From Selaginella moellendorffii (Eukaryota; Plantae; Lycopodiophyta): a stretch of 64,000 nucleotides of DNA. The position numbers were made by a program, and so were the translations under genes. The notes beneath the pieces are model-generated. The model did not search any database, was not told the origin of the DNA, and was given only the letters and a program-made list of their open reading frames with translations. Shown in pieces: positions 3,341 to 62,707 of the stretch (within the stretch, counting starts at the first letter, position 1; the number at the start of each line of letters is the position of its first letter). The DNA lies in contig NW_003314269.1 in NCBI RefSeq assembly GCF_000143415.4, forward strand, positions 1,619,544 through 1,683,543. Reading direction: 5' to 3'.

Positions 3341-5416
3341 ATGGCAACTCATGGAGATCAAGCCAAGACGGTCGCGCTCCAAGACTTCGCCGAGCGAGAT
3401 GAGCGGCAGAGAGCTCTGGCAGTGTCGATCCGCGGCTGCGGCGATCTCGCGGATGCGCGGCTCCTCCACTCCCGCGTCCAGGCAACTCACTTCCGCCACG
3501 ACAGGTACCTCTCCAATCTCTTCATCGAAGTCTATGGCAAGATTGGCAGTGTCGTGGACGCGAGACGAACTTTCGACTCCATCTCTCAGCCCAATGTATT
3601 CTCCTGGAACATGATCATCGGAGCTTACGCTAGAAATGGGTTTCTGAAAGAAGCGAGGCAGGCCTTTGATGCAATGCCCCAGGCATATTCCATCGTCGCG
3701 TCCACAGCCATGGTGGCGGCATATGCCCAGACTGGGCATCTGGACGAGGCTAAGGGAATCTTTGACAAGATGCCAACCAAGACCGTGGTGACGTGGAATG
3801 CCATGGTTGCGGCATTTGCGCAGAACGGTAGGATTGTCGAGGCACGTCAGCTGTTTGATTCGATGGACGAGCGCGATGTGGCCTCGTGGAACAACATGAT
3901 AGCAGCATATTCTTTGGCTGGGAATCTCCGGGTGAGTAAGCGCATGTTTGATTCCATGCCCGAGCGCAATGCCACGTCGTGGAATGCCATGATGTCGGCA
4001 TATTCTCGGGAAGGGGATCTGGAATCGACACACCGGATCTTTAACGAGATGCCAGAGCCCAACGTAGTGTCGTGGACAACGCTTGTCACGGCATATACCC
4101 AGAGAGGGGATACCGCCAACGCGAGGGGAACCTTTGACAAGATGCCCCAGAGAGATACCGTGACGTGGACGGCTATGATTCTCTCCCATGCGGAGAAGAG
4201 GGAAATCGGTGAGGCCAAGAGATTGTTTGACAAAATGCCCGAGTGGAGCAAGATCGTGTGGAACACGATGATGTGGGGATTCGCCCACAATGGGCTTCTG
4301 GACGATGCAAAGAAGCTCTTCGATTCGATGCCAGTTCGCGACGCGGCGTCCTGGACGATCGTGATCGCGGCGCTGAGTCGTGTTGGGCGATTGGCGGAGG
4401 CGAGGGCGCTGCTGGATCGGATGCCCAATCGCCTGCCCATGGCGTGGAATGCTGTGCTTGCGGGATACGTCGACTATGGCGAGCTGCGGGAGGCGAGAGC
4501 GCTGTTTGAGACGATGGGCGAGGCGGAGAAGGGCGTCGTGACATGGACCATCATGCTTACCGCATTTGCCCAAGGAGGGGATTTGGAGTACGCGCGCGTA
4601 GTTTTCGATTCCATGCGAGAGAAGGATCTGGTGGCATGGAACGCGATGATCGCTGCGTATGCGAGGTTCTCGAGAGTGAATGAAGCGGAGGATTTGTTTT
4701 TGAAAATGCCAAGGAGGGATCTTGTCTCGTGGACGGCAATGGCCTCAGCATTTGCCCATGCGGGGCAAATTTACTCCGCGTTGAGATTCATCCACGAGCT
4801 CATGCCGGAGAGGGACGCCATCACCTGGTGTTCGATCATCGCCTGCTGCTCGCAGAACGGGATGGTCGATCGCGCGAGGAGGATTTTCGACGCGCTGCAG
4901 CTTGGAGCGGAGGAGCTGCCCCTGTGGAACGCGATCATCAGCGCGTGCGCGCTCAATGGCTGCTACCGCGACGCACTCGAGCTCGTCTGCTCGATGCAAA
5001 TGGACGGGGTGGAAGCGGAGGAGATGACGATGGTGAGCGTGCTCATGGCATGCAGCCATGCCGGCTGGATCAAAGCCGGCAGGGGTTACTTCCTGTCGAT
5101 GATCGCCGACAGGGGCTTGTCGGCCAACCTGGAGCACTACTGCATTGTGGTGGACATGCTTGCTCGCGGGGGACAGCTGAAACGCGCGGAGCAGCTCCTG
5201 GAGACGATGCCGTTTGAGCCGACTCGCGTCGCGTGGACGGCGTTCTTGGGCGCTTGCAAGAACCATCGAATGCGATTGCGTGGAAGCACTGGAGGTGAGA
5301 TGATCGATCCAAAGCTTTTCTGGGCGGACGGGTCGTCGCCATCGTCAGCGTCTGCGCGAGTTAGTTCGTCCGGGACTCTGGTTCTGCTGTCCGAACTGCG
5401 CAAGCCGGGACGATAA
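3341..5416 (+). CDS. PLS-class pentatricopeptide repeat protein, intronless, no DYW domain
   Basis: 691-aa ORF of tandem ~31-aa repeats (FDxMPxRxxxSWxxM) followed by HYCIVVDMLARGG and an E1-like motif (AWTAFLGAC). Confidence 0.92.
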   Translation: MATHGDQAKTVALQDFAERDERQRALAVSIRGCGDLADARLLHSRVQATHFRHDRYLSNLFIEVYGKIGSVVDARRTFDSISQPNVFSWNMIIGAYARNGFLKEARQAFDAMPQAYSIVASTAMVAAYAQTGHLDEAKGIFDKMPTKTVVTWNAMVAAFAQNGRIVEARQLFDSMDERDVASWNNMIAAYSLAGNLRVSKRMFDSMPERNATSWNAMMSAYSREGDLESTHRIFNEMPEPNVVSWTTLVTAYTQRGDTANARGTFDKMPQRDTVTWTAMILSHAEKREIGEAKRLFDKMPEWSKIVWNTMMWGFAHNGLLDDAKKLFDSMPVRDAASWTIVIAALSRVGRLAEARALLDRMPNRLPMAWNAVLAGYVDYGELREARALFETMGEAEKGVVTWTIMLTAFAQGGDLEYARVVFDSMREKDLVAWNAMIAAYARFSRVNEAEDLFLKMPRRDLVSWTAMASAFAHAGQIYSALRFIHELMPERDAITWCSIIACCSQNGMVDRARRIFDALQLGAEELPLWNAIISACALNGCYRDALELVCSMQMDGVEAEEMTMVSVLMACSHAGWIKAGRGYFLSMIADRGLSANLEHYCIVVDMLARGGQLKRAEQLLETMPFEPTRVAWTAFLGACKNHRMRLRGSTGGEMIDPKLFWADGSSPSSASARVSSSGTLVLLSELRKPGR

Positions 5417-6458: not shown

Positions 6459-8519
6459 TCACAAGGCAAAGTGTGGCTTTTTACTACTCTCAGCTGTTCT
6501 AGCAAAGATTCTTGCGCTTGATTCGTTTGCAAGCAGCACAAACGCGGCTGCGTTTCTTGGCTCCAGCTCCAACACCATCTTCGCCGCCGCTGCTGCTCGC
6601 TCGGGATCCCCGTGGCTCCGGGACGATCCCAGCAAGCTCATCCAGTCGAGGAGATCGGGCGAGTACGGCATTGAGCGGATGAGCTCCTCCGCTTGCTGCA
6701 AGTATCCCGAGCGGCCGAGAAGATCCACCAGGCAGCAGTAGTGCTGCTTGGTTGCGGCGATGCCGAAATCCATTGTCATCGAGCGGAAGCAGCCGCGACC
6801 ACCCTCCAGATCCCCCGTGTGGGTAAATGCGAGTAGGATGCTGGCGAAGCACGCGTCGTCTGGAGATATCGTGAGTTTCATGTAGTGGAAGAGCTGGATC
6901 AACTGGTGCGGCTGCTTGTTCTGTGCAAATCCACCCAACAACGCGGTCCATGACACGATGTCCCTCGCCGGGGATGATTGGAACAACTTTGTGGATTGCC
7001 GGGTCTGTCCGTTCAGCCCTCGCATGTACACCATCACGTTCCACGACACAATATCCCTTTCGACCATCTCCGCGACGAACATATGTGCAGCCCGAGCAAA
7101 ATAGCCGTTTAAGGCATATGCTGCGAGCATCGCGTTCCACGCGATAACATCCTTTTCCTTTATACTGCGAAACATTTGCTCTGCCTCCTCGACATGACCC
7201 AGCTTTGCATAAGCAACGAGAAGAGTGGTCCACGAGACTGTGTCCGGCATTGGCATTGAATCAAACAAAGCTTTTGCTTGTGACAAATGAAAAGAGTTGG
7301 CATACACCGCCAGCATGGAATTCCACGCGACGTTGTTCCATGCCGGCATTCTTTGGAAACAATCCCTTGCTTTATCGATATTCAACGTTTGACCGTAGCC
7401 TAAGAGCATGGCAGTCCATGTCACAATGTTGCTACCGCCAATTCTAGCAAACAATTCTCTTGCATGGTGCATATGCCCTGATGCGGCATACGCTGTAAGC
7501 ATGGTGTTCCAAGCCGGTAAATTCCATTCCGGCATTGAACATAGAACATTTCTTGCTTGCTCTAACCTAGAGTTTTCCGTATAGACAGATAACATCGTTG
7601 TCCAGGTTATCAAATTCCGCTCCGTCATCTCTTGAAAAGTCTGCTCGGCCTTGTACACATCCCCAACCTGGGCAAATCCTGACAGCATGGTGTTCCATGT
7701 GGCAATGTTTCGCTCCTCTAGTCTATGCAAAAACTCTCTTGCCTTAGAAATCAAACCATCGGAGGTGTAAGCAGCGAGCATTGTATTCCACGACACCACA
7801 TTCCACTCGGGCATCGATTGGAAAAACTTCTCGGCTTTGTGAACACCATGCGCCTGGGAATACGCAGAAAGCATCAAATTCCAAGAAAACATGTTCCACT
7901 CGGGCATTGACGAGAAAACAAAACACGCAAGCTTGCAGTCACGGTGTTGCACAGGCGCTGACAAAAGTGCCGTCCACGAAACTAGACTCCATTCTCGCAT
8001 GCTGTCAAAGATCTCAAACGCCACTTGCATATGCCCCGCACGGGCATATGCAGAAAGCAAAGAATTCCACGAGATGATGTTGCGTTCCGGCATCTGGAAG
8101 AAAATTCCCTGGACATCCGCAAGATTCCCAGCTTGAGAATATGCTGAGAGCATTGTGTTCCACTCCACGAGATTCGTCTCTCGCATTGCGTCGAATATCT
8201 CCCTGGCATGCTGGAGGTGCCCGTTCTGGGCATAGGCCGAGAGCATCAAGCTCCACGAGAAGACGTTTCGGTCGTTGGCGATGGAATCGAATACCTGGCG
8301 AGCATAGTCTGGCCTTCCAACCTTGCCATACGCTTGGATCATTAGATTCGCCGCATAAACATCGTCCAAGCAGCACGAAAGATCCCGCTGGATGCTAATG
8401 AGCTCCGCTAGATCTTTGCAATGTCTGATGTGCTCGATGCATCTCATAAATCCTCTCGCCTGTTGCCTCGATCGTTGCAAACACAAGAGCAAGGTGCTCA
8501 AAGACGCTGTAGAAGCCAC
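6459..8519 (-). CDS. PLS-class PPR protein with E-type C-terminus, no DYW domain
   Basis: Tandem MPEWNxxSWNxML repeats, HYCCLVDLLGRSG, and an E motif ending LEPRNAAAFVLLAN. The ORF opens at GTG 8519; the first ATG is at 8447. Confidence 0.92.
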   Translation of the reverse strand: MASTASLSTLLLCLQRSRQQARGFMRCIEHIRHCKDLAELISIQRDLSCCLDDVYAANLMIQAYGKVGRPDYARQVFDSIANDRNVFSWSLMLSAYAQNGHLQHAREIFDAMRETNLVEWNTMLSAYSQAGNLADVQGIFFQMPERNIISWNSLLSAYARAGHMQVAFEIFDSMREWSLVSWTALLSAPVQHRDCKLACFVFSSMPEWNMFSWNLMLSAYSQAHGVHKAEKFFQSMPEWNVVSWNTMLAAYTSDGLISKAREFLHRLEERNIATWNTMLSGFAQVGDVYKAEQTFQEMTERNLITWTTMLSVYTENSRLEQARNVLCSMPEWNLPAWNTMLTAYAASGHMHHARELFARIGGSNIVTWTAMLLGYGQTLNIDKARDCFQRMPAWNNVAWNSMLAVYANSFHLSQAKALFDSMPMPDTVSWTTLLVAYAKLGHVEEAEQMFRSIKEKDVIAWNAMLAAYALNGYFARAAHMFVAEMVERDIVSWNVMVYMRGLNGQTRQSTKLFQSSPARDIVSWTALLGGFAQNKQPHQLIQLFHYMKLTISPDDACFASILLAFTHTGDLEGGRGCFRSMTMDFGIAATKQHYCCLVDLLGRSGYLQQAEELIRSMPYSPDLLDWMSLLGSSRSHGDPERAAAAAKMVLELEPRNAAAFVLLANESSARIFARTAESSKKPHFAL

Positions 8520-9762: not shown

Positions 9763-10185
9763 GACAAGTCGAGGGGTCCTATAATCGTGAGGATCAAGCT
9801 GCACAAGAAGGGATATGCAGTCAAAGAACCCTGCAAGGATCACTGCAAAGATCAAGTCGCGAGGATTGAGCTCCACAAAGAAAACAAGGAAAGCAGTAAG
9901 ACAGTGGTAAGGGCGATCAAGCCTTGCAACACAGCAAGAAAGGCGTCACAGCAGCGGAGGAGTCTTAAGGTGCTTGAGACGAGCGCTAGCATGAAAATCG
10001 AGTGTGAGCCAGTGAAGAAGGTGCTCAATGCTAGGTCCTTGAATGTACCATTGGGCGATGCTGTGAAGAGACGAGAGGAACGGGGCGTTCACTATCTTGA
10101 TTTTGGTGTTGGTGATGGGTGTGTTGCTCGTTTCACAGCTCCAAAGATCAAGTGGAACCCCATGCGCACCACCACTCGCACATGA
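9352..10185 (+). CDS. Orphan K/E-rich protein with a 70-aa tandem N-terminal repeat
   Basis: Intronless ORF from ATG 9352 with a charged composition and a codon-preserving 210-bp duplication. No family recognised. Confidence 0.6.
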   Translation: MASTFVEMHGGMPVTKELIVDNDELMEALAEAAEAHKKREREEEHKDGQPLKKVRRDDIREEPCKDQGQKMPSTFVEMHGGMPVIKELIVDNDELMEALAEAGEASKKREREEECKDGQPLKKVRRNDAREEPCKDQDKSRGPIIVRIKLHKKGYAVKEPCKDHCKDQVARIELHKENKESSKTVVRAIKPCNTARKASQQRRSLKVLETSASMKIECEPVKKVLNARSLNVPLGDAVKRREERGVHYLDFGVGDGCVARFTAPKIKWNPMRTTTRT

Positions 10186-10249
10186 TTTTCGTTAATGTTG
10201 CAAAATAATTATTATTATATGTCTTTCATACTTTAATAATTAACATTAT

Positions 10250-12940
10250 ATCTTTGTCTCGCTTCTTGCGATTGGTATTTTTGTCTCGCTCCTAGCAATT
10301 GGTGGCTTTATCTTGCTTTTAGCGATTGGAGCTTTTGTCTCATTTCGAATATTTTTCTTGCCCTCGTTTCCAATGATGGGTTTCAATGTCTGCTCTACAA
10401 GAGCGCGTCATATATACTATACTTTAAATATTTTATACATAATATATTTTCTAAAGTTGAGATGATTTAGTTTTGATATTCAACAATTTTAAAACGTTTT
10501 ATTGATAAAAAATTAATATTTTATGTAGTCTATAATTAATTGGTAGAAGAGGATAATAGTTGCAAAGATTAGATAAATTTGCTTGCATACAATAATAAGC
10601 AGCATAGTAAAAAATAATAAGTTAAAAGACACAATCTTTTATATAGACAAACTCATTAATTATTCACTTTTGTTACTTACAATTTATCACATTACTTTCC
10701 TAAAAGAGTTACTCTTTTAATACCCTACCCCTTAGAAGAAATATCAATTTCAATATATAACCAACTAATAAAATCAAACCTAAGACCTTTCTAATACCAT
10801 TATCATAAATTTTACTTTATTCTTCACTAGTAGTACTTTTGATATATGTTATGGATAATATCTTTGTTTTAAACAGTTTTTTTGTTTTAAAAAAATGTTT
10901 GAAATCAAGTTTTTTTAGTATTTACATTGGTGCTCTTTGTGATTTTTGCATTTGTTTTGCATAAATTTTTAGTGGAAGAACAATTAATAAGCTAAAAGAC
11001 TAAATAAAATAAAAAATATTAAATGGTCTTAGATCTAATCCTTATAATTTAGAATTTATGTCGAGAGTGAATATAAAACATATACACTTAACTTTTTCCT
11101 TAATTGATATAAATAATTACTTCTTTAATTGCAATGCCTTTGAGTTTTGTCCTATATTATTTCTTTAATTGCTTTATCTTTGCTAAAGATTTATGCTTGT
11201 AAGGTATTCTTTGTTTTTTTAACAATTTAAATTAAATATTAATATTTTTTAAACATAGATAAAATAGAGCTCATATTAAAAAATATGATATATGATTAAG
11301 CATATAAATATTTTTCAACAAAATAAATAATAATACTTGAACAATAGTTTTATGCTATAATCTACTATTAAAGGAAAAAAATATAAAAACTTTATTCAAA
11401 ATTTTATTGAATTGATGAAAATATATTTTAATTCAAACTTTTGCTAAATGAGCAAATTATAATATGGGTTTTATAAATAACTATTTATGTTACACCATAA
11501 TATTCTACTAAAAAAATATCTCTCTCATGCCACATTATGCATTAGCGGTTTAAGATACTTTGTCTAGCATTAGTTTAGAAATTTTTACTTGCAACAAATG
11601 AAAATAATTAAACACTACTAATATGAAATTTCATGCTATGTTATGCTATATAAGTATACTTTGAAATACAATCCATTATTTTTTTGTAATATTTGATAAA
11701 TCACCATATAAACTGTTTTGAGTTCATTGGTAAATTCCATTAGATATAAAAAATCTAATATAAACAAGTAATATAAATGCTCTTGAAAATTCTTCTTTGC
11801 CTTAATTTTATAAAGAGGTAGTGGTTTTAGAGGCTCAACCATGAAGGCATCCTTGCAAACCAAGTGGATATTAATATAGTGGAGATTTATGCTATGGCAT
11901 GAGGTTACACTTGAGGATATTTGGATCTCAACTTTAATAACTATGTCACTGTGAAAAACATGCTCATTAATATTTTGAAAGGTTGGTTAGCAAACTTGTA
12001 GGTGGTAGTGGATATACCTAAAATATGCTTTGATATTCTAAGGGTTTTCTACCGTTGTTATTCATTTAGATTAATCTTGTATTTATAATTTACAAACTTT
12101 CCTAAACACTTCCTAGTATATTCTAATTTATTCTACCATCTAATGGTATTGATATTCAATAAGATTAATCTTGTGTTTATAAATTGTAAACATTTTTATA
12201 ATCTTATATTAACTATATTATTAAATCTACAGAAAATTATTACTAATGTGGTAATAAAAAATTTCACTCATAAATCTTAAACATTTATTCTTGCTTATAT
12301 ATATAAAAAAACTTTTTACAAAACAAGCTAAGAGACATACTTTGGAAAAGATAGTGATTTTTGCAACCTTGCAATGTAGCATGTTCCTAACTTATAGCTA
12401 AATACATTGGATTGCATCACCCTCTTGGTTGGGGCAATACTACTAACTTTTTTGACAAGTTTGATTTGTTTTCTAAGTCTTCCTCTTCAGCTTCTTGTCT
12501 TTTTGAGAGTTTTGATTTTATACTACATGATTTGTCAAGCTTTTGCAACTTTTTTGTGAAAATGGTGGATTATTTTATTGTTCTGGGACCAACAATAGAG
12601 AGAAGAATGAAAGTGAGTAGGTCACTCATGTGTGACAATCAATATGTGATGCACCAGCATCAACCTCGAGGGCATAGAGAGCCAAGTCCAACCCAAAAAA
12701 GACCGAAAAGCCGTATTGTAATATCATTGACCATGCTAAGAATATTGTGATTACAGTCCAACGTATGCAATTGTATCCAAAGGTGAGTTGCCAGTATTTC
12801 CAATCAAGTCTGTCACTCTCTAGTAGCAATCTAATGATAGCACTTTTGAAGGAGAGGATTACTCACTCTTCGCAATCACCCGAGCCAGAATGTAGCTCTT
12901 GGTTCAAAGTCACATTTGCAATAAAATCTAATATGCCAAT
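10250..12940. mobile_element. Very AT-rich tract, probably a degenerate DNA transposon (hAT-like trace)
   Basis: Abrupt AT enrichment, no intact ORF and a short repeat array at the left edge. Minus-strand fragments LRSKYPQV and NIHLVCKDAF near 11850-11930 loosely resemble the hAT HCxxHxLxLxxxD region. Confidence 0.3.
10251..10348. repeat. Short imperfect tandem array, ~27-28 bp units, about 3.5 copies
   Basis: Units TTTGTCTCGCTTCTTGCGATTGG, TTTGTCTCGCTCCTAGCAATTGG, TTTATCTTGCTTTTAGCGATTGG and a partial TTTTGTCTC. Confidence 0.8.
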
Positions 12941-23023: not shown

Positions 23024-24733
23024 ATGGAGAATGGTGCTGTGGGCGACGACGCCGCGGCCAAGATCACGAGACAGGTGAGTGGAAGCGCATTGTGAGATGG
23101 AGCGCGACTTTTCTCTTCTTCGCAGGTGGAATTCTACTTTAGCGACAGCAATCTCGCCAACGATGCGTTTCTACTGCGCTCGATTGAGGAGAGCGCCGAC
23201 GGCTGTACCTTTTTCTTTCGCGCTTTCCACTCAAATCGCTTTTTTCATTCTAAACATCCATTCCTTGTAACAGTGGTGAGCTTGTCGGTGATTTGCGCCT
23301 TCACTCGGATGAGATTTCACTTGCGGCTCTCTCAAACCACTCCAGAGACGATTCCCAAGGGTGTCGTCGCTGCGGTCGCGGATGTTTTGAGGAAATCCTC
23401 GTTCCTTAAAGTTTCGGACGATGGTATGTGTTCTAGCTGGAAAATAAACAAAGGTTTTCCCTGTTCTAAAACGTGTTCGTTGTTTACAGGCCTCCGTGTG
23501 GGACGAGTCCACGAAATGCAAAAGCCGGAAGAGGTTCGTGCTGAAGTTGATGCTCGGAGTTTGGCAGTGTCACCGTTTTCGTGGAAGACCACGAGAGAAG
23601 AGATCGAGGCTTTTTTTGAAAGCAACTGCAAGGTAGGAGTTATACTTGGTTTGGCTTTGGATAATTCAACGTTTCTGGCTTTCTAGATTCTTAGCGTGCG
23701 GGTGCCTCGTCACCCTGCAGTAAAAGCTTTCAGTGGCTACGCTATTGTGGAGTTTGCATCTCCAGAAGAAGCACAGAGAGCGTCTGGGATGGGACTAAAC
23801 TTCAAGGGCGCCGACTTGAAGTTCCAGTCCAAGTAAAATTCTTTCAAACTTCTGTTGTGAGTTCGTCTTTCACGGCGTGGTTTTCTCTCGCAGGGACTCC
23901 TTCGAGACACTCATGAATTCCCTGCCAAAGAAGGAACAGAAAGAGAGGTAATTCCGTCTGCCTGGAAATTTGCGATAGTGATTGTTTTTCTTCCTTCAGG
24001 GACGACTATGTGAAAGGACTTCTTGTGCGCTTTAAACTGACGAAGATTGAGAAGGGCGCCCAGCAAGAATCGGAGAAGAAGGCCGAGGAGGAGAAGAAGG
24101 ACGAGGAGAAAGAAGAAGACAAGAGCAAAGACACTGAAGATAAAGACGGAGAGGCAAAAGAGAAAACAGAGAAAGGAACTCAAAGTGACGCGGTCATAAG
24201 GGAGGACCTCAAGGCGGTCTTCCAGCAGTATGGGAGCGTGAAGGTCTCAAAGCCATCGTTCTTTCTTCTCTTCACTTTTGATTTTTCCTGCAGTTTGTCG
24301 ACTTCTCAAAGGGCGAGACCGAGGGATACATCCGCTTCGAAACTCCAGAGGACGCAGGCAAGGCACGGACAGCAGCCGTGATCTCGGACGAGGGCGGTCT
24401 TGTGATCAAGGATTACTTGGCAACGCTGGAAGCTCTCGAAGGTTTGCAATCAAAGCTGGTTTTTCTTCTTTGCTTTACTGTGCGTTCTCTCGCCCAGGAC
24501 AAGCCGAGCGTGACTACTGGAAGAAAATCTGGGATCAACAGGTCAAGCGGCGAGAAACCTCCGGCCAAAATCGATACAGCAGAGACAATCGAGCTCGAAA
24601 TCCCGGGAAGCAAGACAGGAAATTCAAGGGAAATAGTAACCATGAGGATAAGAAGAATGCCGCGACCGGGAAGCGCACGATCTTCCAAGACGATGACGAT
24701 GCGCCCGAGCCGAAACTCCAGAGAACAGAGTGA
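23024..24733 (+). CDS. La protein (La motif, RRM and C-terminal xRRM), multi-exon
   Basis: KITRQ|VEFYFSDSNL La motif, LKVSDDG, RRM1, and xRRM (IREDLKAVFQQYGSVK|FVDF...GYIRF...ERDYWKKI). Confidence 0.92.
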
Positions 24734-24897
24734 AAGCGAAGAGCTCTCTGCCAAAATTTTGCCAAAGTTTTTAGGGCTCCAACGACGTACTTTTCAAATT
24801 TGAAAGTGGGAATATCCTTTTGACGCGTGTCGAGGTTTTATTTGTTGATACACCTCACGCGGGGCTCCCTAGGGTTTGCGCGGGGGGACTTTTGGCG

Positions 24898-25988
24898 ATG
24901 GCTGGAAGGCGCGGCGGTCGTAGCAACGGGATGCTCCTCATGCTGGCGCTTCACGTTTTCTCGCAGTTCGTCCAGCTCGAGAGGAAGCCGCCGGTTACGG
25001 CGGCGCTGATTCTCGCGAATGTGATCGTCTATCTGCGCCCTGGGAGCCTGCACGAGGTTTTGCCATCGATCGAGGAGGTCTGCCTCAGTCCCTACCTTGT
25101 TCTCCGGGTAAGCGCTCGTAATCCTCTTGAGAATCCCCCGGTTTGATCGAGATTTCGCAGAATTTCGATGTGAAGCGCTTGCTTCTCTCGGCTTTCTACC
25201 ACGTCGACGAAGCGCACCTGTTCTACAACATGATCTCACTGCTCTGGAAGGGCGTCCAGCTCGAAGGTAGAATGGGAAGCCCGAAATTCGCGTCCATGGT
25301 GGCTCTCCTCCTGGGGATGTCTCACGGCTTGATGGTGTTGCTGGGAACGCTCGTCTCGACCCTGACCGATTCGCCTGCGCCTTACACGTCCTGTGCCGTG
25401 GGATTCTCGGCGCTTCTCTTCGCTCTCAAGGTAGTCCTCAATCACAACTCTCCAGCCAACGCCATCGTCTATGGCTTCGTAGTACCAGCGAGGTTTGCAG
25501 CATGGGCAGAGCTCGTTCTCGTCCAGATGTTCATGCCAGGCGCCTCGTTCTTGGGCCACCTCTCCGGAATTCTAGCAGGGCTGCTCTACGTACGTGCTCC
25601 CAGGTTCTTCTCCAGTGGCATCGGGGCTCTCGTAAGAAGATCGGCGAACTGGTCGTGGATGGTGACTAGGCCGCTGTGGTTCTTACTGGGACGACCATCG
25701 CCACCGCCGTCTCGTCGCTTCGGTGGAGGATCTGTGGGATCCAGGAATGAAGGTGGCGGAAGTGGAGGCGGGCTAAGTTTTCAGATGTGGAGGTGTCGAG
25801 CTTGCACGTACGAAAACTGGGAGCCTGCCGACAGCTGTGAGATGTGTGGAACTCCGAGGTCTGGTGGCGGCAACAGTTCCTTCAGCCCGACGGCTCCGCC
25901 GTGGCCACAGCATGAACCGCTGCCTGGCTCGCCGCAAACTTCTGCCGAGGCCATACGGCAGGCACGTATTGCAAGATTTACGAGGTGA
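24898..25988 (+). CDS. RBL14: Rhomboid-like protease with C-terminal RanBP2-type zinc finger (RBL14-like)
   Basis: KPPVTAALI, HLFYNM, catalytic GFS, ASFLGHLSGI and WRCRACTYEN...CEMC. One intron at ~25108-25160. Confidence 0.88.
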
Positions 25989-26301
25989 CGGCGTGCGTCG
26001 TCCATCGGCGGAATTTTTTTGGAGAGTCCCAGCAAAATATGTGGAGTGTTTTCCCTCTCGACCGGGCCGGGGGGGTCATGTAAGTCCGATGTTCTAGATG
26101 GCGTGCGAAGTCGACAACTTTATCACGAAGCGAGAATGCGCTCAAGAAATCACCCGCGGCAATACACGACAGTGAAGGTAGACTGGAGGAAGTTATCCCA
26201 GCAGTGAAAGGCAGGTTCGACATTCGGGCAGCATTTATATCTCCGCCTCTCGCGCTTTTCGGGGCAAGTCAGTTTCCAAGTTTCCGAAGTTCCGATCGAG
26301 C

Positions 26302-28044
26302 ATGGGCTTTTGCGGTGGTGTGCTACTCGTCGTCCTCACTGTGCTCTTGGCATCGTCAATGCGAGCAAGACCGACGGCATTTAGCTGCAAGTGTCTACCT
26401 TCTGATGACTGCTGGCCCGACTCAAGCGCCTGGCAGGCTCTCAATGCGTCCATTGATGGGCAGCTCGTAGCTTCGAAACCGCCGGCTTGGCCGTGCCACG
26501 AGCCCGAGTACAACGCTCTGCAGTGCCTCGAGGTGACGCAGAAATGGAGCGATGCGTTTTGGAGAGCTGCGCAGCCCGGTGCCATGCAAGACTCCTTCTT
26601 CGAGATGGATGGCAACGAAGGTTGCCTTCTCTCCGGGAACAAGAAAAGTAGCTGCTATCAAGGGCGGGTCTCGGTGTTTGCCGTCAACGTGTCGAGCGCA
26701 TCGCACGTCCAGAGAGCTGTGGAATTTGCCGCGACTTACAACCTTCGTGTGACCGTCAAGAACACGGGTCACGACTACTTTGGACGCAGCAACGCAGCGG
26801 GGTCGCTTAGCATATGGACGCACCACCTCAAGGATATTTCTTTCGTCGAGGAGTTTGTTCCAGAGGGATGCAACAGCTCGGCTGCTCGATCCGGCGTGAC
26901 AATTGGAGCAGGAGTTGTGTGGGAGGAGCTCTACCGCGCTGCCGACGCGCATGGGAAAGTCATAGCTGGTGCTCAGTGTTCCTCGGTTGGAGCTGCCGGA
27001 GGCTATCCTCAAGCCGCGGGGCACAGTCCTCTGTCACCCAAGTACGGCCTCTCGGCGGACAACGTTCTCCAGTACAAGGTCGTGACGGCGGACGGGAAGC
27101 TGGTGGTGGCGAATGCCTGCCAGAACAAGGACCTGTTCTGGGCTCTTCGTGGCGGCGGCGGAGGAACTTTCGGTGTCGTGGTTTCCGTGACTCACGCGAC
27201 TCATCCTGCGCTGGAGAGCTTGCAGTTTGCCTCGTACGTTGTCGGCGCCAACACTTCCGAGAGCTTTGAGCTGGTCGTCACGGAGTTCGTCAAGAGCAAT
27301 CCGGGCCTGTCCCAGGACGGATGGGGTGGCTTCTTCCTCATCGCCAAGCGGGCGCTCATCGTCCAGTACCTTCTTCCAGACAAGAACTCCTCCTTTGCGC
27401 AGAGCTCGTTTGATCCATTCCTCTCGGAGGCGAGGGGCATCGCCGGCGTGAGCGTCAACGGGGCAATGCAGAGCTTCTCCTCCTACCTCAAGTGGCACGA
27501 GGCCGTCCAGTGCTCCAAGTCCGGCTGCTCCTTCGCAACTGGCTCCTCGGAGCTGCTGGTGTCGAGATTGATCCCGAGCAGCACCTTTAGCGACGATCCG
27601 GAGGAGCTGGCACAGACTCTAGTCGGGATTTGGGACGAGGGATACGATCGAGTCATGGGGTACTTGACCGCGGGTGGCGAGGTTTCAGTGGCTCGAGACA
27701 ACGCAGTGAATCCGGCATGGAGGGAAGCGCTGTGGCACATCATAGTCGTGAAGCTCTTCCCTGCCAACGAGACCCAGGCGGCGAAGAAGTCTCTTGCTCG
27801 CGCCATCACCAAGACCGGGGGCCGGCTGAGGAGAGTGGCGCCATCCTCGGGCTGCTATCTCAACGAGGCGGATGTTAACGAGCCGGACTGGCAGCAGGCA
27901 TTCTTTGGCGACAAGTATGACAAGCTCAAGCTCATCAAGGAGGCTGTCGATCCGCAGGGCCTGTTTGTGTGCAAGAAGTGCGTTGGGAGCGAGGATTGGA
28001 GCGAGGATCTGACGTGTAGAAGCAAGAAGAAATGTAGAACTTGA
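26302..28044 (+). CDS. Secreted FAD-linked oxidoreductase (BBE-like/VAO superfamily), fungal type, intronless
   Basis: Signal peptide, CKCLPSDDCWP, KNTGHDYFGRS (FAD-binding His), GAQCSSVGAAGGY, DLFWALRGGGGGTFGVV, YLNEAD...KEAVDPQGLF and CVGSEDW. Confidence 0.93.
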   Translation: MGFCGGVLLVVLTVLLASSMRARPTAFSCKCLPSDDCWPDSSAWQALNASIDGQLVASKPPAWPCHEPEYNALQCLEVTQKWSDAFWRAAQPGAMQDSFFEMDGNEGCLLSGNKKSSCYQGRVSVFAVNVSSASHVQRAVEFAATYNLRVTVKNTGHDYFGRSNAAGSLSIWTHHLKDISFVEEFVPEGCNSSAARSGVTIGAGVVWEELYRAADAHGKVIAGAQCSSVGAAGGYPQAAGHSPLSPKYGLSADNVLQYKVVTADGKLVVANACQNKDLFWALRGGGGGTFGVVVSVTHATHPALESLQFASYVVGANTSESFELVVTEFVKSNPGLSQDGWGGFFLIAKRALIVQYLLPDKNSSFAQSSFDPFLSEARGIAGVSVNGAMQSFSSYLKWHEAVQCSKSGCSFATGSSELLVSRLIPSSTFSDDPEELAQTLVGIWDEGYDRVMGYLTAGGEVSVARDNAVNPAWREALWHIIVVKLFPANETQAAKKSLARAITKTGGRLRRVAPSSGCYLNEADVNEPDWQQAFFGDKYDKLKLIKEAVDPQGLFVCKKCVGSEDWSEDLTCRSKKKCRT

Positions 28045-28101
28045 GAGAAGGACTCTCCAAATCTAAAAAGTTGATAGTATTGTCTCGGCCTGGGTTGTCT
28101 G

Positions 28102-28165
28102 GTATATTCATTGAATATACTTAGAAATTATTCGGTGAATAAACCAGAAATTATTCAATGAATAG
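28102..28165. repeat. Array of three TATTC-N3-GAATA palindromes
   Basis: GTATATTCA-T-TGAATATAC (28102-28120), then AGAAATTATTCGGTGAATA (28123) and AGAAATTATTCAATGAATA (28146). Confidence 0.8.
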
Positions 28166-28177
28166 GTTTCGGGTTTG

Positions 28178-29035
28178 ATGGCGGTGAATAGGCGATGCAA
28201 ATCAGGTTCCGAGTGGACAGAAACTCAGGTAAATTACTTTAAGATGGAGATTGCCCAGGAAAGAGAGTTTCGCTCGTTTTTCGGGGTAGAACCTCCGCAG
28301 ATGTTCAACGAGGACGTGAGTGAGTTTCTGGGTTTAGACTTGAGCGATGTCATGCTGCAGTCGACGATACAAATCCGACACATAAGGTCTCGCTTCGTCA
28401 AGCTCCTGGTCAAGCACATAATCGCAGTGACCAAAACACACAGGCACGAAGAGTCGGCCGTGGAAGACATGTCAACCTCACTCCTGGAGCTGTTTGAGTA
28501 CGATGGCGACGACAATTCGGTGCGCAGCAGATGTACCCTGGATCTCTTCATGTCCAACGCCAAAACTCAAGCAACCCCTGATGTTCTCATCGAGAGATTG
28601 GACACCGCAATCAAGCTACTGGTTCAAGAAGACAAAAGCTACGATGTAGGCCATCATCCAGAAGCACAATTGATGGCAGAGGCGGTTGCAGCATACCAGG
28701 AGAACAGGCGCTTGTACGAAAGGCTGGGAAGGGAAGATTTTCCGGACCAGCAGACGATTCCAGGCATTGTCATGCTAGGTAAGTACTTGGTATTTCGTTT
28801 GATCGAGCTATAGCCACATTGTTCTTCAGGTACTTGTCCTACCTTTTACGTCATCCCAATGACGAAAGCTCTGGCCGACTGTGTGAGAAATGGAGATGAG
28901 CCCACTCTAGTCACCCGGGTCAAGAAGTATGTCATTCCCAATCTCCCTGCCAGCAAATCCGATACAATGCTTTCCAGGCAGCACCGCCATCACATTGCTC
29001 AGTGCTTGGAGGCATTCAAAGCCTTCGTTGAGTAG
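28178..29035 (+). CDS. Uncharacterised 268-aa protein with a PD-(D/E)XK-like motif; join(28178..28778,28830..29035)
   Basis: A 51-bp phase-1 GT-AG intron joins ...GIVMLG to TCPTFYVIP...CLEAFKAFVE*. Motifs KSGSEWT, EESAVED, TPDV, LLVQEDK and PEAQLMAEAVAAYQ. Confidence 0.75.
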
Positions 29036-29339
29036 GTTGATATGTATCTCGCTGTTTGTCCTTCGGTTTTAAAGTCAATAATGCAAGGTGCGTAAATCTC
29101 ATTTCTCCTTACCGGTTAGCAACATCGGAATCTCTTATAAACCTACCCTTCGAGCAAATCCTTTACGTGACAAATACGATGAAAACGTGAGCCTTTATTG
29201 TTTCTGCGTCCCTAACAGAAGACCTGCTTGTTCCTGATTAGACACCTCTACCACCTTTCCCTTTTACACGTCCTTTTTAGGAAACACGGTTCACTTCAGT
29301 TGAGAAGAGAAATATATTAAGAATTCAAATACAATACAC

Positions 29340-31260
29340 TTTAGTTTTCTACCAATTACCTTAAAGAAGTATAGCCTAAACTGGCTCGAAACTAGGTGAA
29401 GTATTTTTTTATTTCTCCTTCTACTCTATGATCTCAAATAAAGAAGTGATCCATCTCAATGTGTTTTGTTCTAGCATGAAAGATCAGATTTTCAATCATG
29501 CTAAAGTTGACGTATTGTTATTGTAGACAATTGGGTTTTAAACATGGACGTCCAATATTTGCTAGAAGTCTTCTCAATCAAATTGCTTCTTTTGTGATAT
29601 TTGCATTGTATTCAGCTTCACATGTTGAAAGAGTAATTTGTTTTCTTTTTTCCATGACCAAGAGACAACAACTCCACACATTTCCACTTTTGGACTCCAA
29701 TTGTCAAGATCACCTGCTAAATTTGCATTGGTAAGGCTGATGACTTCAGAAGCTTTAAGACCAGAGTAGACAATCCAAATTTTGGATGTACCTTGGAGAT
29801 AGTTTAGAATTCTACATGCCGCATACCTGGATTATTTAAGAAACGCCTCATATTTACAACAGTAATAGCAATATCTGGCCTTGTAGCAAGATACATGAGT
29901 GATCCCACAAGATTTTGGTAAGACTTCGTCTGCAAAATCCATTTCTCCCCCTCAGTGCATGGACTATTTGCTTTAGATAGTTTATCATGCAATGCCAGAG
30001 TGGATATAGATTAGTGCTTGCACATGTTTGAATAGCACACAATAATGCCAGTAGTATATTTCTCTTGAAAGAGAACTAATGTGCTGTGCTTAATAGATAC
30101 AATTATTAAGTCATATAAATAAATTGCAATTATAGTTTATGATAAATATAAATATTCCAATCTACTTCAGTGTGAGTGAAGTTTATGGATCATTAATGGT
30201 GTTATACCGGTGATAACATTTTTACAAAAACCAACCCTGCTTTAAGCCATAGCCAGATTTTTGTTATTTCCAAAAAACTCAAAATCTTAAGAAAAGCATT
30301 TCATTTGATGTAATTCCAAGTTTTGAGCTGCAGAGATAGTAAATAATACCCAGATAGATTAGTTTTTGCCACAAAAGATATCTGTGTATAATCAATGCTT
30401 TATTTCTGAGAGTGTTCTTTGATCACAAGACGAACTTTATAATTATCTATATCACTATTTGACATTAACTACTCATCCATGGTTTCAATTCCCAAGATTC
30501 ATTAGCAACCTAATTTCTGAAAGAAGTGCTTAGCATTAAAACTTCTTTAAATGTATGTAGTTCATTTATATCACTGTAAAGATAAAATATATGTAATAAC
30601 TGTCACATAGTTTTTTTTTTCGTGGTTTTAGGACTCTAATAAAACTATTCTTCAAATTTATCTGAATGTGAGTCAAAATTTGAAGTACTTTCCAAAAACG
30701 ACTAATCATGATCAATTTCTTTAATTTGAGTTTGATAGATATATTGAATAAAGGATGTATCTTGTGTCATAAGTATTTATAGACTCATGAGTATCCATTA
30801 TCTAAGTTAAAATAGATTCCAAATAAACACAAAAAACTCTTTGAGACTAAATTATATCCTAATTTAATGTTAAATTTGAAATCCAAGCTTCTGTGCATGC
30901 CATTCATTTTGGATAAGAATTAACAAATCACATACAAATTTTAGCTCATTAAGTTTTATTATCTGTCAAGAGACAATACATCTTGAATCAATTTTCCTTA
31001 TTAGGAATGTATCCTAATAAAATGGAATTTTGTGCTTTATTTTGAAGTTTATATTGACAAACTTCAATTTTTGTTTAGCCCATTATGGCTTTAGTATGAC
31101 TCTACTAATAGTATGAGTTTGAAGTTGATTCTAAACATAAATACTTGTACATCTAGCAAACATCTGTGTGTTTCATGATATATCAAGTGATATTTAAAGT
31201 TAAAAGCTTCTTCCTGCCATTTTTTGGCCATGTTATTTTGGATTTAGACGCTAAAAATGA
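29340..31260 (-). mobile_element. Highly degenerate Ty1/copia retrotransposon relic
   Basis: Minus-strand traces in copia order: HTDVC (integrase, ~31165), ELHTFKEV (~30555), YKVRLV..IDY (RT, ~30430), YQNLVGSLMYLATRPDIA (~29900) and FHARTKHIEMDHFFI (RNase H, ~29460). Many stops and deletions; no LTRs seen. Confidence 0.8.
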
Positions 31261-31399
31261 ATCTCATGCATTAAAAATTCTTGTGATTTAAATTCTCTAG
31301 CATTATCTACTCAAAGTTCTTTGATTGATCAATTAATTATACTTTGGATTTGTATAATCCATGCTTCGGTATGGTTTCTCAGTGCAAATATCCATGATT

Positions 31400-31600
31400 T
31401 ATGATCTCTTGGATCACGATGCTCACGCACGGCAGTCCAAGAATCTCTTCGATCACATCCGGAGATTCGAGTTCCCTCGTCTCCTGCTGTGCTGGACCGT
31501 CGTCACATCCACGGCCATTCTCATGGCATTCGCCAAGAAGGTGTTTGATTTGATGTCCCCAGTGAGAGTGGTAGCAACATACAGCCAGATTCCTCGTTGG
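31400..31600 (+). pseudogene. PPR gene remnant
   Basis: TGGATCACGATGCTCAC, CCAAGAATCTCTTCGATC and GCTGGACCGTCGTCACA are shared with the PPR remnant at 42110-42790, with internal deletions. Confidence 0.7.
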
Positions 31601-31809
31601 TGGCTCTTCTCCTCTCAAGTTCCACCACCAAAAAACTCTAATCTTCGTTTGAGTTCGTCAAGGCGGCTAACGTGAGAAGAACTTCCATCATTTCTCATCA
31701 GGCGAGTTTCATCCTTAGAACTGTGAGAGTTGAACTAAAAAAGCTTTTCGCTGGTCTTTAAGGAAAAGCTTTTGAAAATCTCTTGATTTCAAGTAAGAGC
31801 GAATAGAAG

Positions 31810-32215
31810 GTTTGTCTCATCGACACTCCCGACTTCAAGAACAGTGACATTTTGGGTAGGAGTTTGCTGTCATTCTCTGATTCTTCTTCTTCTCCTAGGG
31901 AAATCAGACCCTTATGCGATCCTCAAGAACTCTCATAGTTTTTTCTCTTATCTAGACCAAAACTTTGTCTTCCATCTTCCAGGGTAGGGTTCCACTCCGA
32001 AGTGGAACGAAAAATTCGTGTTTAGCCTCGAGGGTGAGAGTGATGTTCCTCTGGAGGACGAAAGCTGTTTGAAGGATCACGTCATTGGCAATGATGATTT
32101 CATTGGGACTGTTAAGAAAGCTTTGTTTCTTTTTTCTCTGTCTTTGTTTTTTAGAGAGAGTATTAACATTTTTTTCAGCTCTGGGACAACCAAGGCAAAG
32201 TCAAACTCTCCATGA
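31810..32215 (+). pseudogene. Small C2-domain protein remnant
   Basis: Spliced pieces FKNSDIL|GKSDPYAIL, GSTPKWNEKFVFSL and DHVIGNDDFIGTV; incomplete. Confidence 0.7.
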
Positions 32216-62522: not shown

Positions 62523-62707
62523 GAAGAGCTCCTTACTAGTGTATCAATGGATCGATGTTTTGTTTCTCTTGTTTCTCTTTACTACGACGCAGAGCTCCTC
62601 TTGTTCTTCCTATCCTAATGTATCAATGGTTTCACTAAGTTCTTCTAGATCTCTGGAGTTCTCTAAGAGCTCCTCTTGTTCGTACTAATGTATCAATCGA
62701 TCGATGC
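62523..62707. repeat. Three imperfect ~70-bp tandem units
   Basis: AGAGCTCCT...TA(A/G)TGTATCAAT at ~62525, ~62591 and ~62666. Confidence 0.75.

What the first reader, a model, noticed from the sequence alone, without database searches (positions are those of the whole stretch)
26302..28044. BBE-like oxidase of fungal rather than seed-plant type
Seed-plant BBE-like enzymes typically have RSGGHDYEG. This one has KNTGHDYFGRS, an N-terminal CKCxPxDxCWP, CxQGRV and a C-terminal CVGSEDW, the pattern of fungal FAD oxidases such as isoamyl alcohol oxidase and ZEB1. It is intronless, secreted, and keeps both the His and the Cys (GAQC) expected for bicovalent FAD. Its substrate is unknown.
Basis: partly seen in the sequence, partly recalled or inferred. 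Interest (0 to 1): 0.7.

Follow-up and report, generated by a model that had tools for sequence, protein, structure and literature searches.

The report
Fungal-type flavin oxidase gene in Selaginella
An intact, transcribed, intron-free gene in the spikemoss Selaginella encodes a secreted flavin oxidase of a type otherwise centred on fungi; it belongs to a multi-copy family shared only with ferns, so it probably entered early vascular plants from a fungus, though the trees cannot prove the direction.

Summary
Window 26302-28044 (+) is an uninterrupted 580-aa ORF with Pfam FAD_binding_4 and BBE domains, and all quoted motifs are present. The genome is Selaginella moellendorffii. The neighbours are ordinary plant genes, so this is not contamination.

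The nearest solved structures are two fungal oxidases, MtVAO615 and MtVAO713 (E 3e-77 and 1e-72 over the full length; model TM 0.84-0.89). Seed-plant BBE-like enzymes match only the FAD domain (E about 1e-21, TM about 0.6). His157 and Cys226 align with the two FAD-tethering residues of MtVAO615. RNA contigs from four studies cover the ORF with no splice joint while splicing the neighbours' introns.

The only named plant relatives are Selaginella paralogs and Pteridaceae ferns, in both a word search and an exhaustive profile search of 1.84 billion representatives. These form one clade next to early-diverging fungi and bdelloid rotifers. The root is unstable: AU tests reject neither a nested nor a sister position. 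Fungus-to-plant transfer is therefore probable (about 0.65), not shown. The substrate is unknown.

The scan already reached the same reading for two paralogs on other pieces of this genome (s1-363803, s1-380734). This is a new member of a known enzyme kind, of moderate interest.

The parts
26302..28044 (+). Complete intronless coding sequence (580 aa plus stop) of the FAD-linked oxidase
   Evidence: ORF list; Pfam domains; end-to-end alignment to MtVAO615; RNA contigs cross it with no joint
26302..26367 (+). Predicted signal peptide (about residues 1-22; hydrophobic core 5-17)
   Evidence: Kyte-Doolittle 11-mer mean up to 3.35 at residues 7-17 and no other membrane-like stretch; helix 5-18 followed by low pLDDT at 15-26 in the model. 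The cleavage site was not computed.
26386..26418 (+). N-terminal Cys-rich motif CKCLPSDDCWP (residues 29-39), a subfamily hallmark
   Evidence: C.C.{3,6}C[WF]P is present in 29/30 Mortierellaceae, 7/8 Calcarisporiella, 5/5 Ascomycota and 12/15 Selaginella entries. A shorter C-x5-CWP form is seen in bacterial L004 and L008.
26683..27108 (+). FAD_binding_4 domain (residues 128-269)
   Evidence: Pfam PF01565, E 1.2e-21
26770..26772 (+). His157 codon, the predicted 8-alpha-N1-histidyl FAD attachment site
   Evidence: Aligned with His157 of MtVAO615 (PMC6017366); invariant in all 112 eukaryotic family members aligned, gaps aside; translation
26977..26979 (+). Cys226 codon, the predicted 6-S-cysteinyl FAD attachment site (second covalent bond)
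   Evidence: Aligned with Cys222 of MtVAO615; translation. A rare state in the family: 5 Selaginella paralogs, 1 Umbelopsis, 1 rotifer, 2 unnamed proteins and all 6 near-bacterial homologs.
26986..26988 (+). Val229 codon, the small 'gatekeeper' residue that permits reaction with O2
   Evidence: Aligned with Val225 of MtVAO615, which PMC6017366 names as the oxygen-reactivity gatekeeper; nearly invariant in the family
27853..27969 (+). BBE domain (residues 518-556), including the invariant YLNEA with Glu522
   Evidence: Pfam PF08031, E 2.6e-10; Glu522 aligns with active-site Glu519 of MtVAO615 and is invariant; translation
27979..27999 (+). C-terminal CVGSEDW motif (residues 560-566)
   Evidence: C[VI]GSE.W is present in 29/30 Mortierellaceae, 8/8 Calcarisporiella and 11/15 Selaginella entries, and absent in the 8 Basidiomycota
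25989..26301 (+). Upstream spacer of 313 nt (promoter and 5' UTR region), transcribed continuously with the upstream rhomboid gene in RNA contigs
   Evidence: Contigs X1 record 4 and X13 record 6 run from 24911/24889 through this spacer into the ORF
28045..28077 (+). Short 3' UTR; transcript coverage ends here
   Evidence: Contigs end at 28038-28077. The X1 contig ends at 28077 followed by adapter letters. Depth is zero from 28232 to 29500 in all four runs.

Best explanation
This is a genuine, expressed nuclear gene of Selaginella moellendorffii. It encodes a secretory-pathway flavoprotein oxidase of the VAO/PCMH superfamily, in the fungal-type MtVAO615/MtVAO713 subfamily. Inferred mechanism: FAD is attached autocatalytically by two covalent bonds, 8-alpha-N1-His157 and 6-S-Cys226, which raises the flavin redox potential. 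A substrate C-H (most likely the carbinol of a bulky, non-carbohydrate alcohol) passes a hydride to flavin N5. His241, Tyr159 and the invariant Glu522 line the site. The reduced flavin is then reoxidised by O2, with access allowed by the small gatekeeper Val229, and H2O2 is released outside the cytosol. Evolutionary reading: the gene is one of roughly ten or more Selaginella loci that form a single clade with fern genes. That clade most likely descends from one ancient transfer of an already intronless fungal gene into an early vascular plant, followed by duplication and loss (or non-detection) in other plant lineages. Shown here: gene integrity, transcription, family membership, conservation of the cofactor-binding residues, restricted plant distribution, plant monophyly. 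Inferred: covalent flavinylation, oxidase chemistry, secretion, direction and date of the transfer. Unknown: the substrate.
For: Identity and fold: Pfam domains. MtVAO615 and MtVAO713 are the top hits by sequence (3e-77 and 1e-72) and by fold (TM 0.84/0.89 and 0.84/0.85; model pLDDT 83, pTM 0.86). Catalytic residues: His157, Cys226, Val229, His241 and Glu522 align with His157, Cys222, Val225, His237 and Glu519 of MtVAO615. PMC6017366 shows bicovalent FAD, a high redox potential and fast O2 reoxidation for that enzyme. Real plant gene: P0001 is 99% identical and lies on a 6.95-Mb Selaginella scaffold. The neighbours are PPR-E proteins, an LRRNT_2 LRR receptor, a kinase and a rhomboid. GC3 is 0.71, within the neighbours' range of 0.47-0.78. 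Expression: 20 runs from 8 studies hold the ORF. Contigs from 4 studies splice GT..AG introns in the neighbours, cross the ORF unspliced and stop at about 28077. Distribution: the only named plants among the top hits are Selaginella, Adiantum and Ceratopteris, in the word searches and in the exhaustive profile search of 1.84 billion representatives. All other named top hits are fungi of every major phylum or bdelloid rotifers. Tree: the plant clade has SH-aLRT 98 and 93. With a bacterial root under LG+C20 PMSF it is sister to Calcarisporiella + Basidiobolus + Mortierellaceae + rotifers, with Dikarya, chytrids and Umbelopsis branching earlier. Plant-to-fungus path lengths (about 1.4) equal those between Selaginella paralogs (1.3-1.4). 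The closest fungal genes are intronless too.
Against: The direction of transfer is not established. Under LG+F+G4 with 42 taxa the long bacterial branch attaches inside the Selaginella clade (support 53/42). AU tests reject none of three root placements (p 0.60, 0.43, 0.41), so plants may be sister to the fungal sequences and not nested within them. Backbone support in the rooted tree is only 83-93 SH-aLRT. Cys226 is shared with the near-bacterial homologs but with almost none of the sampled fungi. Sampling of lycophytes, ferns and streptophyte algae in the protein databases is uneven, and unnamed transcriptome proteins cannot be assigned to organisms. No substrate is known even for the crystallised MtVAO615. 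One relative, AspoA, works without using its flavin (PMC8752850). Secretion was judged from composition only.
Confidence: 0.7

Rival explanations
1. Ancient vertical inheritance. The subfamily was already present in the common ancestor of plants and fungi and was lost independently in algae, bryophytes, seed plants and nearly all animals and protists.
For: The AU test does not reject a tree in which plants and fungi+rotifers are reciprocal clades (p 0.43). The plant clade is monophyletic. Bacterial homologs with the same N-terminal motif exist.
Against: It requires very many independent losses. No other named plant, alga or non-rotifer animal appears among the top hits of two word searches and the exhaustive search. 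Plant-to-fungus distances are no larger than those between Selaginella paralogs or between fungal phyla, which does not fit a split more than a billion years old. Rotifers, known recipients of foreign genes, show the same pattern.
Confidence: 0.12
2. Transfer in another direction or from another donor: bacteria to plants independently of fungi, or plants to early-diverging fungi.
For: In the LG+F+G4 tree the bacterial branch joins Selaginella paralog P0011. All six near-bacterial homologs and the window gene's subclade share the Cys that forms the second FAD bond, whereas sampled fungi mostly lack it.
Against: That attachment has 53/42 support and sits on a branch of length 1.1, so long-branch attraction is likely. 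The site-heterogeneous model puts the root on the Dikarya/chytrid side. Bacterial identity is only 30-34% against 45-49% to Calcarisporiella. His241 is Phe in the near-bacterial homologs. The family is present in all fungal phyla, including chytrids, which predate vascular plants (established knowledge). Cys and Ser differ by one nucleotide and the state changes repeatedly across the family.
Confidence: 0.1
3. Fungal contamination or an assembly artefact, not a plant gene.
For: Best non-Selaginella hits are fungal. Lycophyte assemblies are known to carry endophyte contigs (bioRxiv 10.1101/2022.12.06.519249).
Against: The gene lies 313 nt downstream of a spliced plant rhomboid gene and among PPR-E and LRRNT_2 genes on one contig. 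RNA contigs physically join it to that neighbour. A 99% identical copy lies on a 6.95-Mb scaffold. Composition is host-like. It is only 45-49% identical to any fungal protein.
Confidence: 0.01
4. An ordinary divergent member of the land-plant BBE-like family (the AtBBE, EcBBE and THCA-synthase lineage).
For: It shares the Pfam architecture FAD_binding_4 + BBE and the His/Cys bicovalent pattern.
Against: Plant BBE-likes align only over the FAD domain at E about 1e-21, against full-length 3e-77 for MtVAO615. TM is about 0.6 against 0.84-0.89. The plant enzymes lack the N-terminal CxC...CWP extension and the C-terminal CVGSEDW, and the window gene has KNTGHDYFG where they have RSGGHDYEG. No seed-plant protein appears among the top 120 or top 150 hits.
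Confidence: 0.01

Closest known systems
MtVAO615 (PDB 6F72), Myceliophthora thermophila VAO-type oxidase
   Same: Full-length homolog (E 3e-77; 29% identity in the Foldseek structural alignment; TM 0.84/0.89). It has the same N-terminal Cys-rich extension, the same His and Cys bicovalent FAD tethers, the same Val gatekeeper and the same active-site His and Glu, and it is secreted.
   Different: It is fungal (Sordariomycetes). Several pocket residues differ; for example, Thr221 and Thr341 correspond to Gln225 and Phe344 in the alignment. No substrate is known for either enzyme, so functional equivalence cannot be judged.
MtVAO713 (PDB 6F74) and its relatives (Hypomyces subiculosus alcohol oxidase, Nomuraea rileyi ecdysteroid-22-oxidase)
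   Same: Same subfamily and fold (E 1e-72, TM 0.84/0.85). These are secreted oxidases of bulky secondary alcohols, with weak activity on ricinoleic acid.
   Different: MtVAO713 has Ser in place of the Cys and so binds FAD through one covalent bond. That is the state of the fern genes and several Selaginella paralogs, but not of the window gene.
ARB_02478, uncharacterised secreted FAD-linked oxidoreductase of Trichophyton (Arthroderma) benhamiae
   Same: NCBI names the Selaginella protein after it. Homologs named after it are detected in fungal secretomes and binned as CAZy AA7 (PMC11339117).
   Different: It is itself uncharacterised, so the name conveys similarity only.
AspoA, BBE-like enzyme of cytochalasin biosynthesis
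   Same: 35% identical to MtVAO615, so it belongs to the same broad subfamily. It uses a Glu (Glu538) as its catalytic residue (PMC8752850). This may correspond to the invariant Glu522 here, but that correspondence was not tested.
   Different: It catalyses a flavin-independent double-bond isomerisation within a fungal biosynthetic gene cluster. The window gene keeps every flavin-binding feature and is not in an obvious cluster.
Seed-plant BBE-like enzymes (AtBBE15, EcBBE, THCA synthase, Phl p 4) and moss PpBBE1
   Same: Same superfamily, same two Pfam domains, and bicovalent FAD in many members.
   Different: Similarity is confined to the FAD domain (E about 1e-21 or weaker) and TM is about 0.6. 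They lack the N- and C-terminal Cys motifs and have a different flavinylation motif, RSGGHDYEG.
Microbial terpene-synthase-like (MTPSL) genes of Selaginella and other reported fungus-to-early-plant transfers (Richards et al. 2009; review PMC12448838)
   Same: A microbial-type enzyme family that is present and expanded in non-seed plants and absent from seed plants (own knowledge; review read).
   Different: A different enzyme family. I found no paper that lists this FAD oxidase family among plant HGT cases. Richards 2009 and Ma 2022 could not be read.

Membership tests
VAO/PCMH flavoproteins, BBE-like subfamily (Pfam FAD_binding_4 + BBE) | N-terminal FAD_binding_4 (PCMH-type) domain | tested here: met
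   PF01565, 77.3 bits against a cutoff of 26.4, residues 128-269
VAO/PCMH flavoproteins, BBE-like subfamily (Pfam FAD_binding_4 + BBE) | C-terminal BBE domain | tested here: met
   PF08031, 40.6 bits against a cutoff of 20.6, residues 518-556
VAO/PCMH flavoproteins, BBE-like subfamily (Pfam FAD_binding_4 + BBE) | His for the 8-alpha-N1-histidyl-FAD bond | tested here: met
   His157 aligns with His157 of MtVAO615 and is invariant in the family
VAO/PCMH flavoproteins, BBE-like subfamily (Pfam FAD_binding_4 + BBE) | Cys for the 6-S-cysteinyl-FAD bond (bicovalent members) | tested here: met
   Cys226 aligns with Cys222 of MtVAO615
VAO/PCMH flavoproteins, BBE-like subfamily (Pfam FAD_binding_4 + BBE) | Covalently bound FAD in the protein, and oxidase activity | not testable with these tools
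   Needs purified protein
Fungal-type MtVAO615/MtVAO713 subfamily ('clade II' of Ferrari et al. 2018) | Full-length sequence homology, including the substrate domain | tested here: met
   E 3e-77 (27-573 against 26-570) and 1e-72 (23-568 against 25-589)
Fungal-type MtVAO615/MtVAO713 subfamily ('clade II' of Ferrari et al. 2018) | N-terminal Cys-rich extension (C-x-C...CWP) and C-terminal CVGSE motif | tested here: met
   Present in the window protein and in most fungal members
Fungal-type MtVAO615/MtVAO713 subfamily ('clade II' of Ferrari et al. 2018) | Same three-dimensional fold over the whole chain | tested here: met
   Foldseek TM 0.84/0.89 (6f72) and 0.84/0.85 (6f74); the next best hit is 0.59/0.72
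Fungal-type MtVAO615/MtVAO713 subfamily ('clade II' of Ferrari et al. 2018) | Small gatekeeper residue that permits O2 reactivity | tested here: met
   Val229 aligns with Val225 of MtVAO615 (PMC6017366)
Seed-plant BBE-like clade (AtBBE15, EcBBE, THCAS) | Flavinylation motif R-S-G-G-H-D-Y-E-G | tested here: not met
   The window protein has K-N-T-G-H-D-Y-F-G; AtBBE15 has rsgghdyeg
Seed-plant BBE-like clade (AtBBE15, EcBBE, THCAS) | Closest full-length similarity to other plant BBE-likes | tested here: not met
   Only residues 128-295 align, at E 1e-21 or weaker. No seed-plant protein is among the top 120 or top 150 hits. A joint tree was not built.
CAZy AA7 oligosaccharide oxidases (GOOX, ChitO, XylO) | Close similarity to characterised carbohydrate oxidases, or carbohydrate oxidase activity | tested here: inconclusive
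   TM 0.59-0.61 and 18-22% identity. MtVAO615 was inactive on 23 carbohydrates. Homologs are binned as AA7 in secretome work. dbCAN was not available.
Horizontally acquired gene (fungus to plant) | Integrated in the host genome and expressed | tested here: met
   Plant neighbours, RNA contigs joined to the neighbour gene, host-like GC3
Horizontally acquired gene (fungus to plant) | Patchy distribution in the recipient kingdom and broad distribution in the donor kingdom | tested here: met
   Only Selaginella and Pteridaceae ferns among named plants; all fungal phyla represented
Horizontally acquired gene (fungus to plant) | Recipient clade robustly nested inside donor diversity in a rooted tree | tested here: inconclusive
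   Nested under LG+C20 PMSF with 83-93 support, but the root moves under LG+F+G4 and AU tests reject no placement

The most novel reading that the evidence does not exclude
A single ancient transfer from an early-diverging soil or symbiotic fungus (relatives of Mucoromycota or Zoopagomycota) gave the ancestor of vascular plants a secreted flavin oxidase. The gene then expanded to ten or more loci in Selaginella, persisted in ferns and was lost in seed plants. The window gene's subclade carries the second covalent FAD bond, a state rare among the sampled fungal relatives, which would suggest a plant-specific shift to a higher redox potential or a bulkier substrate in extracellular H2O2-producing chemistry.
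Probability: 0.55. Interest if true: 0.6.

Novelty: new member of a known kind. Interest (0 to 1): 0.45.

Why it matters
If the transfer reading is right, this adds a well-documented case (expressed, multi-copy, shared by lycophytes and ferns) to the short list of fungus-derived enzyme families in early vascular plants. It also supplies plant members of an oxidase subfamily whose substrates remain largely unknown even after two crystal structures. The Selaginella paralogs vary naturally at the second FAD-tethering position (Cys, Ser, Gly, Ala), which offers a natural series for studying mono- versus bicovalent flavinylation. The gene is, however, already annotated in NCBI under a fungal-derived name, two paralogs have already been followed up in this scan with the same conclusion, and neither the substrate nor the direction of transfer is settled. 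The value is solid but moderate.

Tried and rejected
1. The AU test of fungal monophyly under the LG+C20 PMSF model did not finish in three calls. I replaced it with LG+F+G4 tests on 42 taxa.

2. Rooting with bacterial homologs gave model-dependent positions, so I do not claim that plants are nested within fungi.

3. The paralog P0075 falls outside the plant clade in the free trees. Forcing it inside costs 0.8 lnL (p-AU 0.50), so I rejected a second acquisition as unsupported.

4. Literature searches for a prior description found nothing specific. Richards et al. 2009 is not held and Ma et al. 2022 could not be read. From memory only, the nine families of Richards 2009 do not include this one.

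5. Intronlessness is not evidence for retroposition or recent transfer, because the Calcarisporiella, Mortierella, Adiantum and paralogous Selaginella genes are intronless too.

6. I rejected contamination on the basis of context, composition and RNA contigs.

7. The ESM Atlas search only repeated 'Ascomycota FAD_binding_4 + BBE' clusters.

8. The organisms behind the three unnamed Logan proteins in the fern subclade (P0045, P0049, P0123) could not be determined. P0045 comes from run SRR2103735.

10. The first look-up of encoding contigs failed on a server error and succeeded on repeat.
Full report
**1. Observation.** Window 26302-28044 (+) is an uninterrupted ATG-initiated ORF of 580 codons. 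Pfam finds FAD_binding_4 (residues 128-269, E 1.2e-21) and BBE (518-556, E 2.6e-10). The contrast with seed-plant enzymes is real: in the HMMER alignment AtBBE15 carries RSGGHDYEG where this protein has KNTGHDYFG.

**2. Whose gene it is.** A 99% identical 580-aa protein (5 substitutions) is annotated by NCBI as 'uncharacterized FAD-linked oxidoreductase ARB_02478 [Selaginella moellendorffii]' on a 6.95-Mb scaffold. The window's other long ORFs are five PPR proteins (several with E motifs), a protein kinase, an LRR receptor-like protein with the plant LRRNT_2 cap, an NIF phosphatase and, 313 nt upstream, a rhomboid protease exon. The ORF's GC3 (0.71) lies within the neighbours' range of 0.47-0.78. 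Contamination is excluded.

**3. Transcription and gene structure.** Twenty public runs from eight studies hold the ORF. I laid contigs of four runs from four studies on window 24000-29500, within the 6,000-letter limit. All four remove GT..AG introns at 24241>24292, 24439>24496 and 25106>25160 in the neighbouring genes, so they are RNA. All four cover 26302-28044 with no joint, end at 28038-28077, and give zero depth from 28232 to 29500. The mRNA is therefore intronless with a 3' UTR of about 30 nt. Two contigs run without a break from the rhomboid gene through the 313-nt spacer into the oxidase ORF. Contigs cannot tell overlapping UTRs from read-through.

**4. Family.** Against all PDB sequences the best matches are MtVAO615 (6F72, E 3e-77, residues 27-573 against 26-570) and MtVAO713 (6F74, E 1e-72). 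The next is AtBBE15 at 1e-21, aligned over the FAD domain only. An AlphaFold2 model (pLDDT 83, pTM 0.86) gives the same order by fold: 6F72 has TM 0.84/0.89 and 6F74 has 0.84/0.85, while carbohydrate oxidases and plant BBE-likes score about 0.6.

Ferrari et al. [quoted passage not shown] It is reoxidised fast by O2, with Val225 as the permissive gatekeeper, but it has no known substrate. MtVAO713 binds FAD through one covalent bond (Ser231) and weakly oxidises ricinoleic acid. In the alignment these residues correspond to His157, Cys226 and Val229 of the window protein, and active-site His237 and Glu519 correspond to His241 and Glu522.

Across 127 aligned sequences, all eukaryotic members have the His, the Val (rarely Ile or Leu), the His241 equivalent (rarely Asn or Gln) and the Glu. 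The Cys is rare. It occurs in five Selaginella paralogs, all in the window gene's subclade, and in one Umbelopsis, one rotifer, two unnamed proteins and all six near-bacterial homologs. Ferns have Ser, most fungi have Ser, Ala or Gly, and Mortierellaceae mostly have Glu or Asp.

**5. Secretion.** The N-terminus has a strongly hydrophobic core (residues 5-17) followed by a polar stretch. There is no other membrane-like segment. The protein has six N-x-S/T sequons and 18 Cys. MtVAO615 and MtVAO713 are secreted and rich in disulfides. Entry into the secretory pathway is likely. The final destination is unknown.

**6. Distribution.** In the word search with the protein and with a profile of 15 plant members, the only named plants among the 120 best hits are S. 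moellendorffii (about 13 entries), Adiantum nelumboides, A. capillus-veneris and Ceratopteris richardii. All other named hits are fungi (Calcarisporiella 48-49% identity, Basidiobolus, many Mortierellaceae, Umbelopsis, chytrids, Asco- and Basidiomycota) or bdelloid rotifers.

Because the argument rests on absence, I ran the exhaustive profile search over 1.84 billion representatives. I classified the 140 new representatives by BLAST and looked up names for ten of them. The only further plant entries were another Ceratopteris locus and two Selaginella fragments. Of the other seven looked up, six were fungal and one was an unnamed JGI/IMG protein. No bryophyte, seed plant or alga appears.

Caveats: representatives stand for 50%-identity clusters, unnamed transcriptome proteins cannot be assigned to organisms, and lycophyte and fern proteomes are thinly represented.

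**7. Phylogeny.**
- A 112-sequence tree (LG+C20 PMSF, quick search) unites 13 Selaginella, 6 fern and 3 unnamed sequences with SH-aLRT 98. The window gene is sister to P0002 within an 11-member Selaginella subclade (99).
- With 12 bacterial outgroups taken, the plant clade (93) is sister to Calcarisporiella + Basidiobolus + Mortierellaceae + rotifers (92). Umbelopsis, Dikarya and chytrids branch earlier. In that tree the plants are nested within fungi.
- Under LG+F+G4 with 42 taxa, the long bacterial branch instead joins a Selaginella paralog with 53/42 support.
- AU tests do not reject any of three root placements: p 0.60 for the free tree, 0.43 for reciprocal plant and fungal clades, 0.41 for plants nested.
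- The outlying paralog P0075 can be placed in the plant clade at no significant cost (p 0.50).

Plant monophyly and fungal nearest neighbours are therefore supported, but the direction of transfer is not resolved by the trees. It rests on three points. The family occurs in every fungal phylum but in only two plant lineages. Plant-to-fungus distances are no larger than distances among the plant paralogs. The bdelloid rotifers offer a parallel case.

The genes are intronless in Selaginella (window gene; P0002, which lies next to an AP2 gene), Adiantum, Calcarisporiella and Mortierella. Intronlessness is therefore a trait of the family, not a mark of the transfer.

**8. Mechanism proposed.** A secretory-pathway oxidase with bicovalently bound FAD takes a hydride from a substrate carbinol (or a similar C-H) and passes the electrons to O2, producing H2O2. 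My best guess for the substrate class is a bulky non-carbohydrate alcohol, such as a lipid or a specialised metabolite. This rests on the MtVAO713 relatives and on the inactivity of MtVAO615 towards sugars. I put it at about 0.5, and it is inference only. AspoA, 35% identical to MtVAO615, acts as a flavin-independent isomerase through a Glu (PMC8752850), so non-oxidase chemistry cannot be excluded.

**9. Prior knowledge.** I found no paper describing this family in plants. Richards 2009 and Ma 2022 could not be read. Two earlier follow-ups in this scan, on paralogs elsewhere in the genome (s1-363803, s1-380734), reached the same conclusion. My tests were made independently and agree with them.

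**10. Verdict.** This is a new plant member of a known, mostly fungal, enzyme subfamily. It probably descends from an ancient fungus-to-vascular-plant transfer (about 0.65). The substrate is unknown.

Noticed in passing
window 24889-26301: The upstream gene is a rhomboid protease with a RanBP2-type zinc-finger-like C-terminus (WRCRACTYENW...CEMCG) and a 53-nt GT..AG intron at 25107-25159. In two RNA assemblies its transcript is contiguous with the oxidase ORF across the 313-nt spacer. This means either overlapping UTRs or read-through.
   Followed up: partly
window 28175-28813 (and to 29035): The downstream orphan ORF, flagged elsewhere in the scan as PD-(D/E)XK-like (s1-375086), has no Pfam hit. 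It has no coverage at all in the four RNA runs that cover the oxidase.
   Followed up: partly
window 3341-5416, 6459-8519, 49417-51198, 62693-64000: The window holds several intronless PPR genes, some with E motifs. This fits the large family of RNA-editing factors in Selaginella.
   Followed up: no
window 10001-12000 and 30001-32000: There are two AT-rich islands (GC 0.27 and 0.33) among genes of 50-60% GC. They were not examined.
   Followed up: no
Proteins P0013-P0095 (Mortierellaceae), alignment column of Cys226: In 22 of 30 Mortierellaceae homologs the position of the FAD-linking Cys is Glu or Asp, an unusual acidic residue next to flavin C6. Ferns uniformly have Ser.
   Followed up: no
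L004 and L008 (a gammaproteobacterial and a Kofleriaceae MAG), about 501-2170: Bacterial full-length homologs (30-34% identity for L001, L002 and L004) carry the C-x5-CWP N-terminal motif and the bicovalent Cys, but have Phe at the His241 position. The subfamily is therefore not confined to eukaryotes.
   Followed up: partly
P0012, P0036, P0037, P0098 (one 4.46-Mb scaffold); P0014, P0256, P0273 (one 1.44-Mb scaffold); P0082/P0099 and P0044/P0122 in ferns: Several paralogs share a scaffold or have consecutive locus tags. This points to tandem duplication as the mode of expansion in both Selaginella and ferns.
   Followed up: no
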